A stretch of DNA of 63,486 bases, the filler included, from Octopus bimaculoides (taxonomy: Eukaryota), in assembly GCF_001194135.2 (NCBI RefSeq). It is 7 parts of 7 records of this genome, joined end to end, with 100 filler letters (N's around TTAATTAATTAA, not from the genome) between each part and the next. Parts side by side here need not be neighbours in the genome. Positions count along the whole stretch, not along the records: positions 1 to 30,553 come from NC_068983.1; 6 more parts are not named here. One strand, 5' to 3'. Below, piece by piece: positions 6,834 to 28,371 of this stretch. The number at the start of each line of letters is the position of its first letter. Positions within the stretch are counted from its first letter, which is position 1. The notes below the pieces were generated by a model, which worked only from the letters and a program-made list of their open reading frames with translations, searched no databases and had not been told where the DNA came from. The position numbers and the translations under genes were made by a program.

Positions 6834-7495
6834 GGATCCTGTTCAAAACGGGGGCACCAGTTTTCATTTATGTTTTATGTAGTCTTTTTGGTACCGAAAG
6901 ACTTTCAAACTTCGTATACTTATCTATTTTGTGTTATAGAACAGAAAAAAAATTTTTGTATTCGGATTTATTTCATGTAAAAAATTGTCTTATTTCGATA
7001 ATTTCAACCAATCACTGACAAGTATTCAGCTGTTTACAGTTACTCTTAAGCGGTGTAAAGCGTATTTAATCTCCATTACTTCTGACATTTTGCAGAGGCA
7101 ACACACGTGTGTTCGTTTTCCCTAACCCTAACCCTAACCCTAACCCTAATTGACTAGCTCCTTCCCTCAAAAACCATGCCTTGTGCCTATAATAGAAAGG
7201 TTTATTAGCTACTGCCAATATGCTTCAGCCATTTTTTGACAAGGAAATAATAATTTTATCACCGCCGCGATTTGTTTATGTAGTCAGCACTTAATTTTTA
7301 CGGCTGAATGGACGTCAGTCATTGGTTGAAATTACATAAATACAACAACTTTAACATGAAATAACTTGCGATGTAGATTTTTTTGTTAAGAAGACTAAGA
7401 GAAAAAGATGTTTTATATGACACATTCTACCAGTGTCCCAAGTTTCAAAGTGTTTCGTTAAGAAAATACTGGTGCCTCCGTTTTGAACAAGATCC
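6834..7495. mobile_element. Non-autonomous TIR element, Merlin-like (GG termini, 8-bp TSD)
   Basis: 28-bp TIRs GGATC(C/T)TGTTCAAAACGG(G/A)GGCACCAGT (26/28 identical); exact TSD CGGATCTC at 6826-6833 and 7496-7503. Superfamily is inferred. Confidence 0.8.
7120..7149. repeat. Interstitial telomeric repeat (CCCTAA)5
   Basis: Five perfect CCCTAA units inside the TIR element. Confidence 0.95.
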
Positions 7496-8353
7496 CGGAT
7501 CTCATTGTACAGTGTCTTGGCTATTAGATCATGTGTCATCGGTTGATAATAGTGCGGTACTTTCGAACAGCTGCTTATGATGTGTGTGATATCTTCGGTG
7601 TTAACTCCACAACGTCTACATCGGTTACTATATTTTACTGTTTTACTTCCTGAGTCTCTATCCTTCTTGTGCATGAGGAATTTGATTGCTATTTCCTGTT
7701 CCTGAATTGTCAACGCATACCCTTCAAAGTAAAAGTTGGCGATCCGGTCGTTGGTCCATGATAGGCTGCTTTGCATGTATGTATGTATGTCTTATCTCAC
7801 ACATCTTGGAATTCTAACCTCACCTTTGGAACTATACTCGCAGATTCAACCTTACTTCTTAGAATTCTCCCGCACTACTATCGGATTACACTAGATATCA
7901 TTATTTTCGGTTTTCAACGCTCCACTTTCTTACAACCTTAACCACTTCTTTTCCATTTCTCCTGGACTTGTTCTTCATCTCCACCAACGTACTTATTCTC
8001 CAATTCCTCCTATCTTTTTTTTTTTTGCTTCATCTATATTTTTCTGTTTTTATCTGTCTAAATATTCGCACACTAGTTATAGTCTTACTGTTAACTAATG
8101 CATTACTCAATCAATAGATTATTAGTTTTACATTACTTTTTTTCCTCAAACTCCCGCAGCCTGTTCAATGATTTCCCACTCTGTAACTGATATTCTTTCC
8201 TTTTTATCTTTGCTATCTTGTAGATGCTAGCTGTTGGGAGTTATGTCATTGAAAAGGTAACACTGTATGATGAAAAACTTAAAGCTAACAATGAAACTGA
8301 AGTGAACTACAACTGGTGCATATGTCTACTGCAAAATGAACCTCCCAGAATAG

Positions 8354-12915: not shown

Positions 12916-13435
12916 ATTGCATGGAAAAATGTGAGCATGAAAAGTAATATTCTTAAGATTATAAACCTGGAAAAGTACAGGACAAGTTATTACACCTGGA
13001 AAAGTATAGGACAAGCTATTACTTCAAGTAAAGTAACGATTAAGAAACTTTTTACTTAAAATATTGCAGCTAAAATTAAAATTTGAAAATTAAAACTTAT
13101 TTTATTATAGTTTACAAATAACACTATACTTATTTAAGTAGAATTTGGCTAATTTACTACCTTAAATACAGAAAAAAAGTGACTAATTGGACAAACTTAC
13201 AAATTAGCTGAACAGTTTTGTACAATAAATTTAAAAGATGAGAACTGCAAAGGGATAAATTAGAAGAACTGGCATTCTTTACTGCAATATTTTAAGTAAA
13301 AAGTTTCTTATTCTTTACTTTACTTGAAGTAATAGCTTGTCCTATACTTATACAGGTGTAATAACTTGTCCTGTGCTTTTCCAGGTTTATAATCTTAAGA
13401 ATATTACTTTTCATGCTCGCATTTTTCAATGTAAT
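12916..13435. mobile_element. Fold-back element with about 154-bp inverted arms
   Basis: Arms 12916-13069 and 13282-13435 nearly identical; each has two tandem about 29-bp ACCTGGAAAAGTA(C/T)AGGACAAG subrepeats; 212-bp AT-rich spacer. Confidence 0.85.
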
Positions 13436-18125: not shown

Positions 18126-19087
18126 ATTTTGGCATATCGAGTCTGTTCAATATGCTTTGCCACTAAAACTATTTAACCTATAGACGGGACCCTGACAGGT
18201 ACTACCACTCCGAGTCAGAGAGCACCTTGGAATAATGGCGACTAAAGGTTAACCCCATTCTCCCCCAGAATTCCATAACTCACGAGCCGGATGCAGTTTA
18301 GTGTCATTCCCAGGGCATAGATCAGTTATAATTAGAAATACCTATTCTAAAATTCTGGGGAGAAACAAGTAGTTAAAACGTCACATATTTTTTTGTATCA
18401 AGCATTTTGTGAACAATTGTTTTATTGGTTTTAACTTCCCAATAAATCAATCAGTGATACATTAAGCTAGAGGATGTTATTCAAGGACTCAACTACGAGT
18501 CTACTGCATCTTATAGCAAAAATTGGTGTAAGCTAATGACATTCAAAACATAACTTTTGTTTTTCCTGTGTCATCTCTTTTTCTTATTACCGCTCTATAC
18601 TCGTCAAACACTTTGTTCTGAAACATGCGCATATTGGATTCTATACCAGGTTATTAAGTCTCGCAATGCCTAAGCGAAATAGCGATATATATATATATAT
18701 ATATATANNNNNNNNNNNNNNNNNNNNNNNNNNNNNNNNNNNNNNNNNNNNNNNNNNNNNNNNNNNNNNNNNNNNNNNNNNNNNNNNNNNNNNNNNNNNN
18801 NNNNNNNNNNNNNNNNNNNNNNNNNNNNNNNNNNNNNNNNNNNNNNNNNNNNNNNNNNNNNNNNNNNNNNNNNNNNNNNNNNNNNNNNNNNNNNNNNNNN
18901 NNNNNNNNNNNNNNNNNNNNNNNNNNNNNNNNNNNNNNNNNNNNNNNNNNNNNNNNNNNNNNNNNNNNNNNNNNNNNNNNNNNNNNNNNNNNNNNNNNNN
19001 NNNNNNNNNNNNNNNNNNNNNNNNNNNNNNNNNNNNNNNNNNNNNNNNNNNNNNNNNNNNNNNNNNNNNNNNNNNNNNNNNNNNNNN

Positions 19088-19132
<45 letters not shown>

Positions 19133-19293: not shown

Positions 19294-20089
19294 ATTGTAC
19301 ACCCAGTATAAAGAACCCCGTATTTTCTGATATCTTCTATCTCATCAGCGCAATATTTTGTTAGATCTCATCCTATTAATGACATCCAACTAAAATCACA
19401 ATTACTACAGGGTATTTTAGGTAACTTATTTGGTTGTTGAACATAATTAGAGTATATATAATTCAGTTAAGAGATATAGTTTACGAAGTTAAACATACAC
19501 ACACGTACACACTTACACTCTTATATACATGTATGAATAATGTATATCTTTTCGACAAAACCTTGTGTTTCCTTCTTTAGCCCACAAAGTCAGAGATGTG
19601 CACTCAACACTAGCCAATCCTCATTCGTCATTAGACTTTCTCTATGACAAAATCAGCAGCTTCTCTAAATCTCACGTTGCATCATTAACTTCTGAAATGT
19701 ATGCTTTTGTAAAACTCCCCAAATACGATAAGGATCTGTGCCATGACTTTCATAATTCAAAACAATTGCCATAAGTGTATTCAGTTTCTCAAACCATGTC
19801 CAATCAAAATCAGCCTTTTTCAACGCTTATGCATATATGCATGCATGTGTATATGTGTCTTCATGTACACATGCGCGCGCGCATACACACACACATACAC
19901 ACATATATTTAAGCAAAATAGCTAGTTATAAAATATCAATAAGAGATAGAGTAGTAACGTACACTAAACAGTAACGCGAGTAGCCACATCAAAGTGGCAG
20001 ATGAATGTTACCACTAGTTTAACCCCAGGCGGATCCTCCGCCACCTGGTTTTCGGTGCAAGCTTTGCACCCTTTATATACAATATATCG

Positions 20090-20134
20090 CGCGGCTGATG
20101 TGAGCCAAATAGCTCGAAACTGGCCGGTCCCGCG
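20090..20134 (+). ncRNA. Type I hammerhead motif, copy 1 (A9U variant)
   Basis: CGCGG-CUGAUGU-GAGC(CAAAUA)GCUC-GAAA-CUGGCCGGU-C-CCGCG; predicted cut after 20129. Confidence 0.75.
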
Positions 20135-20326
20135 ATCCTGTCAGCTGCTAGGAGATGGTAGGGGTTCGCTCCTCCTGCTAGCGATATATTGTATATAAAC
20201 GGTGAAGAGCATTCACCGAAAACCAGCTGGTGGAGAAACTACCGGGGGTTAAACTGGTAGTAACATTCATCTGACACTTTGATGTGGCTAATCGCTTCAC
20301 TATTTAGTATACGTTACTACTCTATC

Positions 20327-20712
20327 GTGGAGACGCAATGGCCCAATGGTTAGAGCAGCGGACACGCGGTCATAAGATCGCAGTTTCGATTCCCAGACCG
20401 GGCGGTTTGAGTGTTTATTGAGCGAAAACACCTAAAGCTCCACGAAGTTCCGGCAGGGGATGGTGGCGAACCCTTCTGTACTCTTTCGCCACAACTTTCT
20501 CTCACTCCTACTTCCTGTTTCTGTTGTACCTGTAATTCAAAGGGTCAGCCTTGTCACACTTTGTCACACTGAATATCCTCCGAGAACTACGTTAAGGGTA
20601 CACATGTCTGTGGAGTGCTCAGCCACTTGCACGTTAATTTCACGAGCAGGCTGTTCCGTTGATCGGATCAACTGGAACCCTCTTCGTCGTAAGCGACGGA
20701 GTGCCAACAACA
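20327..20712 (+). mobile_element. Full-length tRNA-derived SINE family A
   Basis: A box TGGCCCAATGG, B box GTTTCGATTCC, (CAA)n tail, TSD ACTACTCTATC at 20316-20326 and 20713-20723. Confidence 0.95.
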
Positions 20713-20840
20713 ACTACTCTATCTCTTCTTGAGATTTTATAACTAGCTATTTTGCTTGTTGCAAATCAGTGACCGATGGTCACTTTACAATATACCGCTG
20801 GCAGAAGCGGATTTAGATATCGCTCCACTGCGCAGGTGTG

Positions 20841-20885
20841 CGCGGCTGATGTGAGCCAAATAGCTCGAAACTGGCCGGTCCCGCG
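20841..20885 (+). ncRNA. Type I hammerhead motif, copy 2 (A9U variant)
   Basis: Identical to copy 1; predicted cut after 20880; upstream CAGGUGUG retained. Confidence 0.75.
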
Positions 20886-21191
20886 ACCCAGACAGCTGTT
20901 GAGAGATAGTAGGGATTCGCTCCCCTGCTAGTGATATATTGTATATTAAGGGTGCAGAGCTTGCACCGAAAACCAGCAGATGGAGAATCCGCCTGGAGTT
21001 AAACTAATAGTAACATTCATCTGCCACTTTGATGTGGCTACTCGCTTTACTATATATATATATATATATAAATAAAAGATAAACAAGAGTGAAAAAACTA
21101 CAGAAGGCTTGTGTTACATGGTTAAAGTATATATTTAAATTATGTCAAAAAAATGTTATAAAATTTTTTTGGTATATAAACATTGTATTTG

Positions 21192-21230
21192 GAGAAATAA
21201 CCGGTTTCGTGTTGTCATTTCAAATTTCTC
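21192..21230 (-). ncRNA. Degenerate minimal hammerhead in the PLE 3' region
   Basis: Minus: stem I GAGAAAU/AUUUCUC (7 bp), GAAA, palindromic ACCGGU stem III; the CUGANGA box and stem II are damaged (UUGAAAUGACAACAC). Confidence 0.4.
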
Positions 21231-21450
21231 TACTTCATGGTAACATGTCTTCGCTCCCGTGTGTAAATAAAAGAGTTCTAGATAGGGGGAGGTAATTAGG
21301 GATTCCTTCCGGTATAAGGGAGATAATCGAAATGTAGAAGGTGATAGATTTTGATTAATTTATCATGGTTTGGTTTACAATGAATAGTATGTCAGCTTTT
21401 GTTCTATATTTTTTTCCTCTCAGTGAGGTGAATTTCCTTATTTAAGAGTG

Positions 21451-22018
21451 TTAGCAATGGTTAAGTTTGGGTTTATATTTTTGAATGAAGAAGGTTTCCT
21501 TATTTAATCTAATTTGTGTTGGTGTACTAATGGCACATTGATAGAATGGAAAGATTATAAATTGTGGTAGCATTTGTTTTGCGGATTTCTCAATATGCTC
21601 ACTAAAGGGTATCATTCGGTATTCTGGGCATGCAATCTGCCGTCGATGCAGAGTGCATCTGCGTCTGAGCGTTAATCCTGTGGACCCTATGTAATTTTTG
21701 TGGCAGCCCGAGCATCTTATCACATAAGTAAGGTTTTCTGAGGCACAAGTAAAGTCAGATTTAACTTTGAATTTTTGTCCCTCTTTGAAGAGGAATTCTG
21801 AACCTTCTAGAAGGTTTGGGCATGTTGCGCAATTTGGTCGACCACATTTTTTCACTTTTGCATCTGTTATTTTGGAAAATAATTTTGCCTTTGTGAGGAT
21901 CTTTTTCAGTGATTTTGGTTGTTTGTAGCTTTTAATGATTTTGTGTGTGTGTAAAATTTCCTTTAATTTGGGGTCCTTATGTAGTATTGGTATGTTTTGT
22001 CAGATTTTAAAAGAAATC
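21451..22018 (-). mobile_element. Penelope-like element, GIY-YIG endonuclease region (5'-truncated)
   Basis: CGRPNCATC...TCASENLTYVIRCSGCHKNYIGSTGLTLRRRCTLH...SEH...KETFFIQKYKPKLN: GIY-YIG with Cys/His zinc motif; 3' UTR extends to about 21070. Confidence 0.9.
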
Positions 22019-23465: not shown

Positions 23466-23766
23466 GAAGGCGCGTAGCTTAGTGGTTGGGATATTCGACT
23501 CACGATCGTAAAGTCGTGAGTTCAATTCTCAGCAACGCGTTCTGTCCTTGAGCAAGACACTTTATTTCACGCTGCTCCAGTCTACTCAGCTGGCAAAAAT
23601 GAGTAGAACTTGTATTTCAAAGGGCCAGCCTTATCACACTCTGTATCACGCTCTATCTCCTTGAGAACTGTGTTAAGGGTACACGTGTCTGTGGAGTGCT
23701 CAACCACTTGTACGTTAATTTCACGAGCAGGATGTTCCGTTGATCGAATCAGTTGGGACCCTCGTC
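23466..23766 (+). mobile_element. Modular SINE: tRNA head, CORE-like segment, family-A 3' half
   Basis: TAGCTTAGTGG / GAGTTCAATTC boxes; CCTTGAGCAAGACACTT; then AAAGGG...GTTAAGGGTACAC...GTTGATCG shared with 20327-20712. Confidence 0.8.
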
Positions 23767-27388: not shown

Positions 27389-28095
27389 ATCTAAAGAAAT
27401 ATGTCCCTGCCTGTTTATTGACAAACACGTGATTCTTTTTTCATTTTGATAGATGCCATATATGATGTCTTCGTCGTCGTCGTTGTTGTTGTTGTTGTTG
27501 TTGTTGTTGGTAGTGGTGGTGGTGGTGGTGGTGGTGGTGGTGGTGGTTGTCGTCGTCGTCGTCGTCGCCGACGTCGTGAGGATGATGTTGGTGTTTGACC
27601 TACAAACCATATATATGAACAAAGACTAAATGACCATTTTGACGCTATTCTTGAGACATAATGTAAAATTACATTATCCTNNNNNNNNNNNNNNNNNNNN
27701 NNNNNNNNNNNNNNNNNNNNNNNNNNNNNNNNNNNNNNNNNNNNNNNNNNNNNNNNNNNNNNNNNNNNNNNNNNNNNNNNNNNNNNNNNNNNNNNNNNNN
27801 NNNNNNNNNNNNNNNNNNNNNNNNNNNNNNNNNNNNNNNNNNNNNNNNNNNNNNNNNNNNNNNNNNNNNNNNNNNNNNNNNNNNNNNNNNNNNNNNNNNN
27901 NNNNNNNNNNNNNNNNNNNNNNNNNNNNNNNNNNNNNNNNNNNNNNNNNNNNNNNNNNNNNNNNNNNNNNNNNNNNNNNNNNNNNNNNNNNNNNNNNNNN
28001 NNNNNNNNNNNNNNNNNNNNNNNNNNNNNNNNNNNNNNNNNNNNNNNNNNNNNNNNNNNNNNNNNNNNNNNNNNNNNNNNNNNNNNNNNNNNNNN

Positions 28096-28371
28096 TGTAC
28101 CCTTAACGTAGTTCTCGGTGATAGTCAGCGTCACACAGTGTGACAAGGCTGACCCTTTGAATTACAGGCACAACAGAAACAGGAAGTAAGAGTGAAAGAA
28201 AGTAGTGGTGAAAGAGTACAGCAGGGTTCACCACCATCCCCTGTCGGAGCCTCGTGGAGCTTTTAGGTATTTTCGCTCAATAAACACTCACAACGCCCGG
28301 TCTGGGACTCGAAACCGCGATCCTATGACCGCGAGTCCACTGCCCTAATCACTGGGCCATTGCGCCTCCAC
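28096..28371 (-). mobile_element. SINE family A (3' end lost in gap)
   Basis: Reverse-complement match to 20327-20600. Confidence 0.92.

What the first reader, a model, noticed from the sequence alone, without database searches (positions are those of the whole stretch)
19911..21050. Candidate cephalopod retrozyme: tandem type I hammerheads with a 354-nt structured monomer
Seen: two identical 45-nt hammerhead motifs (20090-20134, 20841-20885) head direct repeats. Removing the nested SINE and one TSD (397 bp) from the 751-bp cut-to-cut distance gives a 354-nt monomer rich in short hairpins, e.g. AGTGACC-GAT-GGTCACT and GCCAC-TTTGAT-GTGGC. Established (recalled): tandem type I hammerhead repeats (Schistosoma Sm-alpha, newt satellite 2, metazoan non-LTR retrozymes) self-cleave into monomers of a few hundred nt that can circularise, and CAAAUA is the Sm-alpha loop II. 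Inference: this is a non-coding, non-autonomous retrozyme-like family; I recognise no description of it in octopus.
Basis: partly seen in the sequence, partly recalled or inferred. Interest (0 to 1): 0.9.

Follow-up and report, generated by a model that had tools for sequence, protein, structure and literature searches.

The report
Old hammerhead retrozyme insertion, Penelope-style
This is an old, decayed copy of a small non-coding mobile element that carries a hammerhead self-cutting RNA motif and was pasted in the way Penelope-like retrotransposons paste, which makes it a new example of a known kind and not a new kind of element.

Summary
Two identical type I hammerhead-like motifs (20090-20134, 20841-20885) head direct repeats. 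Removing the nested SINE and one 11-bp target duplication (397 bp) leaves a 354-nt unit.

- 19911-20090 is an inverted, 5'-truncated copy of the same unit.
- The insert sits between (CA/TA)n and (TA)n microsatellites, and one end carries a 54-nt extra "tail".
- A 5'-truncated Penelope-like element (its GIY-YIG endonuclease end) lies across the same (TA)n.

The inverted copy, partial tandem, tail and microsatellite target are together the published signature of Penelope-like (PLE) integration. [quoted passage not shown]

Cautions:
- Both motifs carry U instead of the conserved A9 and score 29-31 bits against an Rfam threshold of 52.
- There are only about 1.6 direct units.
- The three copies differ by 11-15%, and the SINE now splits the unit.
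- No other copy could be found with these tools.
- Cleavage, circular RNA, copy number and the cephalopod origin are all untested.

Verdict: a new member of a known kind, probably dead at this locus. The one curiosity is that the hammerhead is 47/47 identical between copies whose flanks differ by 17%.

The parts
19826..19910 (.). Left flank: a compound (TG/CA)n-(TA)n microsatellite, the probable target of the insertion
   Evidence: Sequence. It is picked up only as spurious mir-297/mir-466 matches. PLEs show an insertion bias for (TA)n and (CA)n repeats (PMC8557442).
19911..20090 (-). Inverted, 5'-truncated copy of the unit (unit positions about 272 down to 93, counted from 20089). It lacks the hammerhead. 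Its outer 54 nt (19911-19964) are the 'tail' that is missing from the right end.
   Evidence: Inverted repeats I1, I2 and I3. BLAST 87% identity over 181 nt, E 9e-60. Three-way alignments.
20090..20134 (+). Hammerhead motif 1 (type I). U9 at 20101, predicted cut after C17 at 20129|20130
   Evidence: Rfam Hammerhead_HH9, 31.3 bits, E 1.5e-5 in a 1.4-kb search, below the gathering score of 52. Folds.
20089..20839 (+). One full 354-nt unit (20089-20326 plus 20724-20839), interrupted by the SINE
   Evidence: Circular fold -122.8 kcal/mol against -94.0 +/- 5.6 for shuffles.
20327..20712 (+). Later insertion of a SINE with tRNA-like A and B boxes, flanked by the 11-bp target duplication ACTACTCTATC (20316-20326 and 20713-20723)
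   Evidence: Sequence. Other copies of the SINE at 28096-28370(-) and 23608-23766(+). ARAGORN finds no intact tRNA. The box assignment is my reading of the sequence.
20785..20838 (+). Segment upstream of hammerhead 2 that can pair with the segment just downstream of either hammerhead, closing the hammerhead domain with a long imperfect helix
   Evidence: Inverted repeats I5 and I7. Duplex energies -50.0 and -47.7 kcal/mol. It is part of the circular minimum-energy fold.
20841..20885 (+). Hammerhead motif 2, identical to motif 1. U9 at 20852, predicted cut at 20880|20881
   Evidence: Rfam Hammerhead_HH9, 29.2 bits, E 7.1e-5. Identity.
20840..21056 (+). Partial direct copy (unit positions 1 to about 218), ending in the (TA)n repeat without the 54-nt tail
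   Evidence: BLAST 87% identity over 223 nt, E 2e-73. Alignments.
21052..21069 (.). (TA)n microsatellite shared by the 3' end of the retrozyme insert and the 3' side of the neighbouring PLE fragment
   Evidence: Sequence.
21454..21999 (-). Open frame for the C-terminal 182 aa of a canonical Penelope-like element (CX4CxxC linker plus a GIY-YIG endonuclease with two internal cysteines). It is 5'-truncated, with no reverse transcriptase part in the window. Its untranslated 3' end runs from 21453 down towards the (TA)n.
   Evidence: Pfam GIY-YIG E 4e-4. 3153 homologues, the full-length ones about 740 aa with the match at their C-terminus. RVT_1 plus GIY-YIG in P0011. tblastn finds only residues about 553-739.

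Best explanation
The locus is one old insertion of a small (354-nt), non-coding, hammerhead-bearing retroelement, that is, a non-LTR retrozyme or non-autonomous passenger of Penelope-like elements. It was integrated by PLE-type target-primed reverse transcription into a (CA)n/(TA)n microsatellite.

Inferred mechanism: a PLE enzyme nicked both strands of the TA-rich target. From the right-hand nick it copied a longer-than-unit RNA, either an uncut multimer or a circle, giving 1.6 direct units with two hammerheads. From the left-hand nick it started 54 nt further 3' on the template (the 'tail') and copied about half a unit, giving the inverted copy. The two cDNAs joined at a GCG microhomology at 20089-20091.

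In its original state, a transcript through both hammerheads could have folded them into a double hammerhead through the palindromic helix III, cut after each GUC, and released a highly base-paired 354-nt RNA able to circularise.

What is shown: the anatomy, the hammerhead architecture, the predicted dimer fold, the excess structure, and the PLE neighbour.

What is inferred: PLE mobilisation, cleavage and circularisation.

The copy is now most likely dead. The copies have drifted 11-15% apart, a SINE splits the unit, and both hammerheads carry U at the conserved A9.
For: 1. Architecture: an inverted 5'-truncated copy, a full copy and a partial direct copy. This matches the description of PLE insertions: partial tandems, an inverted 5'-truncated copy at the 5' end, a tail at one end only, and a microsatellite bias (PMC8557442). 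In vitro, a PLE enzyme extends both strands and uses two internal start sites for reverse transcription that define the tail (PMC11167929).
2. Hammerhead: all core positions except A9 are present. Helices I, II and III are present. Rfam E is 3.3e-4 and 1.5e-3 for the whole window. Two strands co-fold into a double hammerhead with a 10-bp intermolecular helix III, at -41.9 kcal/mol against 2 x -16.4. This is the arrangement described for metazoan type I hammerheads (PMC4209133).
3. Unit properties fit published retrozymes (150-450 nt, non-coding, highly self-paired; PMC7229834). The unit is 354 nt. The only ORF of 40 aa or more that touches unit sequence lies mostly in the SINE or in flanking DNA. 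Circular fold z = -5.2, with the plus strand 20 kcal/mol more stable than the minus strand.
4. The three copies show a star-like pattern of unique changes (12, 7 and 7, with no site where all three differ), as expected for one event.
5. A 5'-truncated canonical PLE lies 3'-end to 3'-end across the same (TA)n. So PLE machinery existed in this genome and used this target.
6. The hammerhead is 47/47 identical while the other 177 aligned columns carry 30 differences (P = 4.8e-4 for that block). This suggests constraint on the motif somewhere in its history.
Against: - Both hammerheads have U9. Natural hammerheads match the core consensus almost without exception, and core mutations usually cause a drastic loss of activity (PMC3088659).
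- In my own scan of metagenome contigs for motifs with this loop, every hit with a fully paired helix II had A9. With at least 3 of 4 pairs the counts were A 35, T 4, C 1.
- The scores are below Rfam's gathering threshold.
- There are only 1.6 direct units, not an array.
- No second locus of the family was found in the window or in metagenome or viral contigs, so family status is unproven.
- The neighbouring PLE shares no sequence with the unit, and two related PLE contigs show no hammerhead, so no partner is identified.
- The tail is 54 nt, against the 30-40 nt described.
- If all copies arose in one event and then drifted neutrally, the perfectly conserved hammerhead is not explained.
- A test of whether the substitutions preserve structure better than random ones was inconclusive.
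Confidence: 0.72

Rival explanations
1. The family, or even this locus, is a live retrozyme whose U9 hammerhead is a functional natural core variant. It cleaves as a dimer and yields circular RNA. On this reading the three copies differ because they were copied from a heterogeneous RNA population in which only the hammerhead is held constant.
For: The hammerhead is 47/47 identical, including six CpGs, while the flanks differ by 17% (P = 4.8e-4). One clean compensatory change is seen in a hairpin, GGTGCA/TGCACC to GGTGAA/TTCACC, and two changes turn a G.U into a Watson-Crick pair. Published retrozyme RNAs are heterogeneous (PMC7229834), and rare core variants can be tolerated (PMC3088659). U9 could wobble-pair with G12.
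Against: No A9 variant is among the active natural variants described. U9 is rare, and in my scan it appears only in motifs with an imperfect helix II. A U9.G12 wobble would engage the general base. The SINE now makes the cut-to-cut RNA 751 nt. The structure-preservation test was inconclusive. A star-like tree fits a single event followed by drift equally well.
Confidence: 0.15
2. It is not a dedicated retrozyme family. It is a one-off internally deleted or heavily truncated copy of an autonomous PLE, namely its terminal repeats (pLTRs) with the ORF lost.
For: Hammerheads sit in PLE pLTRs (PMC4209133). Retrozymes and pLTRs are sequence-related in Xenopus (bioRxiv 10.64898/2026.07.22.740005). 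The architecture is exactly that of a PLE. Only one locus was seen.
Against: The canonical 4-bp helix II, 6-nt loop and real helix III resemble retrozyme-type hammerheads, not the minimal PLE hammerheads. The unit folds as a compact, closed, structured RNA. It has no similarity to the adjacent PLE's 3' region or to two related PLE contigs.
Confidence: 0.15
3. It is a DNA-level foldback or MITE-like element, or a local duplication-inversion, and the hammerhead-like motif is a chance or fossil resemblance with no role in RNA.
For: There is a 180-nt inverted repeat around a 90-nt centre. The hammerhead score is sub-threshold and would recur by chance in a genome of gigabase size. Another inverted-repeat element lies in the window at 12916-13435.
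Against: There is no target duplication at the ends of the inverted repeat. The direct partial copy and the one-sided tail are not explained. The strand asymmetry of folding favours the hammerhead strand. Ten of eleven core positions, three helices and a palindromic helix III loop all fall exactly at the head of the repeat.
Confidence: 0.05

Closest known systems
Metazoan non-LTR retrozymes (Cervera and de la Pena 2020, PMC7229834): coral, mussel and axolotl repeats with type I hammerheads. Historically, newt satellite 2 and Schistosoma Sm-alpha.
   Same: A type I hammerhead at the head of each direct repeat. A unit of a few hundred nt (354). No coding capacity. A strongly self-paired unit. 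A short helix III with a palindromic loop that implies cleavage as a dimer. PLEs in the same genome.
   Different: Only 1.6 direct units plus an inverted half-unit, not an array. U9 in the catalytic core. GC of 46% against the quoted under 45%. Expression, circularity and copy number unknown. A host group not named in the papers I could search.
Penelope-like elements (canonical C-terminal GIY-YIG clades such as Neptune and Poseidon) and their insertion structure (PMC8557442, PMC11167929, PMC4209133)
   Same: A partial tandem forming pseudo-LTRs, an inverted 5'-truncated copy at the 5' side, an extension present at one end only, insertion into TA/CA microsatellites, and a hammerhead in the repeated part.
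   Different: No ORF. The unit is 354 nt instead of 3-4 kb. The tail is 54 nt, not 30-40 nt. The hammerhead has a real helix III and a canonical helix II, unlike the minimal PLE hammerheads. No sequence similarity to the PLE fragment next door.
Rfam Hammerhead_HH9 (RF02275) / Hammerhead clan CL00010
   Same: Best-scoring model. The helix I, II and III layout and the core align position by position, and loop II CAAAUA compares with the consensus CAAAAA.
   Different: 31 and 29 bits against a gathering score of 52. A9 replaced by U. HH9 itself is a conserved single-copy intronic ribozyme of amniotes, not a repeat.

Membership tests
Hammerhead ribozyme, type I | Conserved core C3 U4 G5 A6 N7 G8 A9 ... 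G12 A13 A14 A15.1-U16.1 and H17 | tested here: not met
   All positions match except A9, which is U in both copies (20101, 20852).
Hammerhead ribozyme, type I | Three helices around the core, with helix I open and helices II and III closed by loops | tested here: met
   Helix I 5 bp (CGCGG/CCGCG). Helix II 4 bp with a 6-nt loop. Helix III 3 bp with a GGCC loop. The canonical structure evaluates to -11.1 kcal/mol, and the dimer form with a 10-bp helix III is favoured.
Hammerhead ribozyme, type I | Score at or above Rfam's gathering threshold | tested here: not met
   31.3 and 29.2 bits against 52.
Hammerhead ribozyme, type I | Covariation in the helices across copies | tested here: inconclusive
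   The two copies are identical over 47 nt, so nothing varies. No other family members could be retrieved.
Hammerhead ribozyme, type I | Site-specific self-cleavage after H17 | not testable with these tools
   Needs in vitro transcription of monomer and dimer templates.
Metazoan non-LTR retrozyme | Type I hammerheads in direct repeats of 150-450 bp, from dimers upward | tested here: met
   Two hammerheads 751 bp apart, which is 354 bp without the later SINE. The second unit is partial.
Metazoan non-LTR retrozyme | Non-coding unit with a highly self-paired predicted RNA | tested here: met
   No ORF of 40 aa or more lies within the unit: the only two that touch it run mainly through the SINE or through flanking DNA. 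Circular fold z = -5.2. A long helix closes the hammerhead domain.
Metazoan non-LTR retrozyme | Multi-copy family dispersed in the genome | not testable with these tools
   No host genome is on hand. There is one locus in the window and none in metagenome or viral contigs.
Metazoan non-LTR retrozyme | Expression as linear and circular monomer RNAs | not testable with these tools
   Needs RNA-seq, northern blot or RNase R data.
PLE-type insertion (mobilised by a Penelope-like element) | Partial tandem plus an adjacent inverted 5'-truncated copy | tested here: met
   against the description in PMC8557442.
PLE-type insertion (mobilised by a Penelope-like element) | A short extension (tail) at one end only | tested here: inconclusive
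   A 54-nt extension is present at the left end (19911-19964) and internally, and is absent at the right end. It is longer than the 30-40 bp described. One locus cannot show that the two ends recur.
PLE-type insertion (mobilised by a Penelope-like element) | Microsatellite target | tested here: met
   (CA/TA)n on the left and (TA)n on the right.
PLE-type insertion (mobilised by a Penelope-like element) | An autonomous PLE in the same genome with matching terminal sequence | tested here: inconclusive
   A PLE fragment is present next door, but it shares no sequence with the unit.

The most novel reading that the evidence does not exclude
The U9 hammerhead is not decay. It is a conserved, catalytically competent core variant of a cephalopod retrozyme family, kept identical in copies whose remaining sequence has diverged by 17%. 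This locus would then record PLE reverse transcription of a heterogeneous, possibly RNA-replicating, circular RNA population.
Probability: 0.12. Interest if true: 0.6.

Novelty: new member of a known kind. Interest (0 to 1): 0.33.

Why it matters
If the window is cephalopod, it adds that group to the animals known to carry hammerhead retrozymes. I found no paper on hammerheads or retrozymes in cephalopods in the searchable library.

This single locus also shows, on a retrozyme, the full structural signature of Penelope-like integration: an inverted truncated partner, a one-sided tail and a microsatellite target, with a PLE fragment in the same microsatellite. That is direct anatomical support for the hypothesis that PLEs mobilise animal retrozymes. 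In the papers I read, that hypothesis rests on co-occurrence and on similarity to pLTRs.

It does not change what is known about how these elements work.

Tried and rejected
- **Rfam at gathering threshold on the whole window:** no hits. At E-value threshold, the mir-297, mir-466 and similar hits at 19826-19911 are microsatellite artefacts.
- **ARAGORN:** no tRNA, so the SINE head is too degenerate to be called.
- **Exact scans for the family's hammerhead** (CTGATGWGAGCCAAATAGCTCGAAAC) in metagenome and viral contigs: none.
- **Word-indexed protein search with the GIY-YIG ORF:** nothing. The exhaustive HMMER search was needed.
- **Search for a hammerhead in contigs of related PLEs (L001, L002):** none by Rfam or by pattern, and no similarity to the unit.
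- **Test of whether the substitutions in the three copies preserve structure better than random substitutions:** inconclusive. The copies fold at -35.3, -31.3 and -40.0 kcal/mol, against -33.3 +/- 3.9 and -32.0 +/- 4.1 for random substitutions.
- **Literature search for the effect of A9U:** nothing usable. The statement that A9 matters rests on PMC3088659 in general terms, on my recollection of the Ruffner 1990 mutagenesis and the Martick and Scott 2006 structure, and on the tally.
- **Alternative register** with a three-base insertion at N7 (CUGA-UGU-GA): rejected because helix II would then not pair.
- **Reading the PLE fragment and the retrozyme as one composite insertion:** rejected. They meet 3' end to 3' end and the hammerhead is antisense to the PLE ORF, so they are two separate events in one microsatellite.
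- **Host organism:** could not be identified with these tools.

Full report
**What is in the sequence**

Reading 19700-21300 confirms two identical hammerhead-like motifs at 20090-20134 and 20841-20885. Identity actually runs 47 nt, 20089-20135 = 20840-20886.

The motif reads CGCGG-CUGAUGU-GAGC-CAAAUA-GCUC-GAAA-CUGGCCGGUC-CCGCG. This gives:
- helix I of 5 bp;
- helix II of 4 bp with a 6-nt loop;
- helix III of A-U, C-G and U.G around a GGCC loop;
- C17, with predicted cuts after 20129 and 20880.

The SINE occupies 20327-20712. It is flanked by the 11-bp duplication ACTACTCTATC at 20316-20326 and 20713-20723, and it has two more copies in the window.

**Is it more than chance?**

The repeats are far beyond chance, with BLAST E 2e-73 for the direct copy and 9e-60 for the inverted copy.

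The hammerhead does not reach Rfam's gathering score. At an E-value threshold it is the only ribozyme-like hit in the window. It matches Hammerhead_HH9 at 31.3 and 29.2 bits (threshold 52), with E 3.3e-4 and 1.5e-3 for 30.5 kb. The alignment shows a single core mismatch, U for A9. At that score a gigabase-sized genome would hold chance hits, so the case rests on context as well as on score.

- 19911-20090 is an inverted copy of unit positions about 272 to 93 (87% identity). It abuts the start of hammerhead 1 at a GCG microhomology.
- Next come one full unit (20089-20839, with the SINE) and a partial direct unit (20840 to about 21056, positions 1 to about 218).
- The left end carries 54 nt (19911-19964) that the right end lacks.
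- The left flank is (CA/TG/TA)n. The right flank is (TA)n at 21052-21069.
- In the region shared by all three copies, the unique changes are 12, 7 and 7 and no site differs three ways. This star-like pattern is what one insertion event followed by drift would give.

**The neighbour**

On the minus strand, 21454-21999 is an open frame with a CX4CxxC motif and a GIY-YIG domain that has two internal cysteines (Pfam E 4e-4).

An exhaustive HMMER search found 3153 relatives. The full-length ones are about 740 aa and match at their C-terminus. One of these, P0011, scores for RVT_1 as well as GIY-YIG, and a second, P0020, has a sub-threshold RVT_1 match. tblastn finds only their last 180 or so residues in the window.

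This is a 5'-truncated canonical Penelope-like element. Its 3' side faces the 3' end of the retrozyme insert across the (TA)n. The two share no sequence and lie in opposite orientation, so they are two separate insertions into one microsatellite.

**How it most likely works**

Craig et al. (PMC8557442) describe PLE insertions as partial tandems, often with an inverted 5'-truncated copy at the 5' side, a short tail at one end, and a bias for (TA)n and (CA)n repeats. The in vitro work on an Anolis PLE (PMC11167929) shows three things:
- both DNA strands are cleaved and extended;
- reverse transcription begins at two internal sites that delimit the tail;
- uncut RNA is the main substrate.

Every structural feature of this locus fits that scheme. 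I therefore infer PLE-type target-primed reverse transcription of a longer-than-unit RNA, either an uncut multimer or a circle.

The RNA side also fits published retrozymes (PMC7229834; PMC4209133):
- The unit is 354 nt and non-coding.
- Its circular fold is -122.8 kcal/mol against -94.0 +/- 5.6 for shuffles (z = -5.2). The hammerhead strand is 20 kcal/mol more stable than its complement.
- A long imperfect helix closes the hammerhead domain, at -50.0 and -47.7 kcal/mol for the two copies.
- Two hammerhead strands co-fold into a double hammerhead through the self-complementary ACUGGCCGGU, at -41.9 kcal/mol against 2 x -16.4.

Cleavage and circularisation are inferred, not shown.

**Reasons for caution**

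- A9 is part of the conserved core. Natural hammerheads match the core almost without exception, and most core mutations cause a drastic loss of activity (PMC3088659). None of the active natural variants described there is at A9.
- I scanned metagenome contigs for CTGATG-N-G-NNN-CAAATA-NNN-CGAAA and obtained 59 loci. Every hit with a fully paired helix II has A9. With at least 3 of 4 pairs the counts are A 35, T 4, C 1. U9 is therefore unusual, and more likely a defect than a designed variant.
- The copies are 11-15% apart, and the SINE now makes the cut-to-cut distance 751 nt.
- No other member of the family could be retrieved.
- The host organism could not be verified.

**An unexplained point**

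The hammerhead is 47/47 identical, including six CpGs, while the other 177 aligned columns between the two direct copies hold 30 differences. The probability is 4.8e-4 for that block and 0.015 for any run of that length. The identical run ends six bases after the cut site.

One event followed by neutral drift does not predict this. Three explanations remain possible:
- the copies came from a heterogeneous RNA population with a constrained hammerhead;
- gene conversion;
- selection at the locus.

There is one clean compensatory change in a hairpin, and two changes convert a G.U into a Watson-Crick pair. A randomisation test of structure preservation was inconclusive.

**Comparison and verdict**

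The locus works like, and most likely is, a metazoan non-LTR retrozyme integrated by PLE machinery. The hammerhead fails two membership tests (A9 and the Rfam threshold), so I call it a hammerhead-derived motif of uncertain activity.

I found no paper on hammerheads or retrozymes in cephalopods. However, such repeats are reported across many invertebrate phyla, including molluscs, and their PLE origin is already argued (bioRxiv 10.64898/2026.07.22.740005).

This is a new member of a known kind and of modest interest. Its main value is as a clear structural example linking a retrozyme to PLE-type integration.

Noticed in passing
window 21454-21999 (-), with untranslated sequence down to about 21070: A 5'-truncated canonical Penelope-like element. 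Only the C-terminal linker (CX4CxxC) and the GIY-YIG endonuclease remain. The closest relative is 72% identical, on an ENA metagenome scaffold (L001).
   Followed up: yes
window 20327-20712 (+), 28096-28370 (-), 23608-23766 (+): Three copies (85-89% identical) of a SINE of about 390 nt with tRNA-like A and B boxes. ARAGORN does not call a tRNA in any of them.
   Followed up: partly
window 12916-13069 and 13282-13435: 154-nt inverted repeats, 95% complementary and 212 nt apart, each containing 29-nt tandem sub-repeats. This looks like a MITE or foldback-type DNA element of about 520 bp.
   Followed up: partly
window 7120-7149 and 7351-7776 (-): Five perfect CCCTAA telomere-type repeats at an internal position, about 200 bp from an ORF with a weak zf-RVT match (E 0.004), presumably a LINE fragment.
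   Followed up: no
window about 1770-2480, 18710-19090, 27650-28090: Runs of N (assembly gaps) appear as X-filled ORFs. The assembly is scaffold-level, and one gap truncates the SINE copy at 28096.
   Followed up: no
L012 225-249 and L027 4603-4627; the Ga0157362-64 contigs in general: One metagenome project holds a large family of hammerhead-like motifs (CUGAUGA-GCUU-CAAAUA-AAGC-GAAA) with no obvious helix III, like the minimal PLE hammerheads. Two members carry U9 together with a second change in helix II.
   Followed up: no
L002 3167-3197: In a metagenome contig that carries a full-length related PLE ORF (738 aa), a (TA)n run lies about 220 bp after the stop codon. This echoes the microsatellite association seen in the window.
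   Followed up: no
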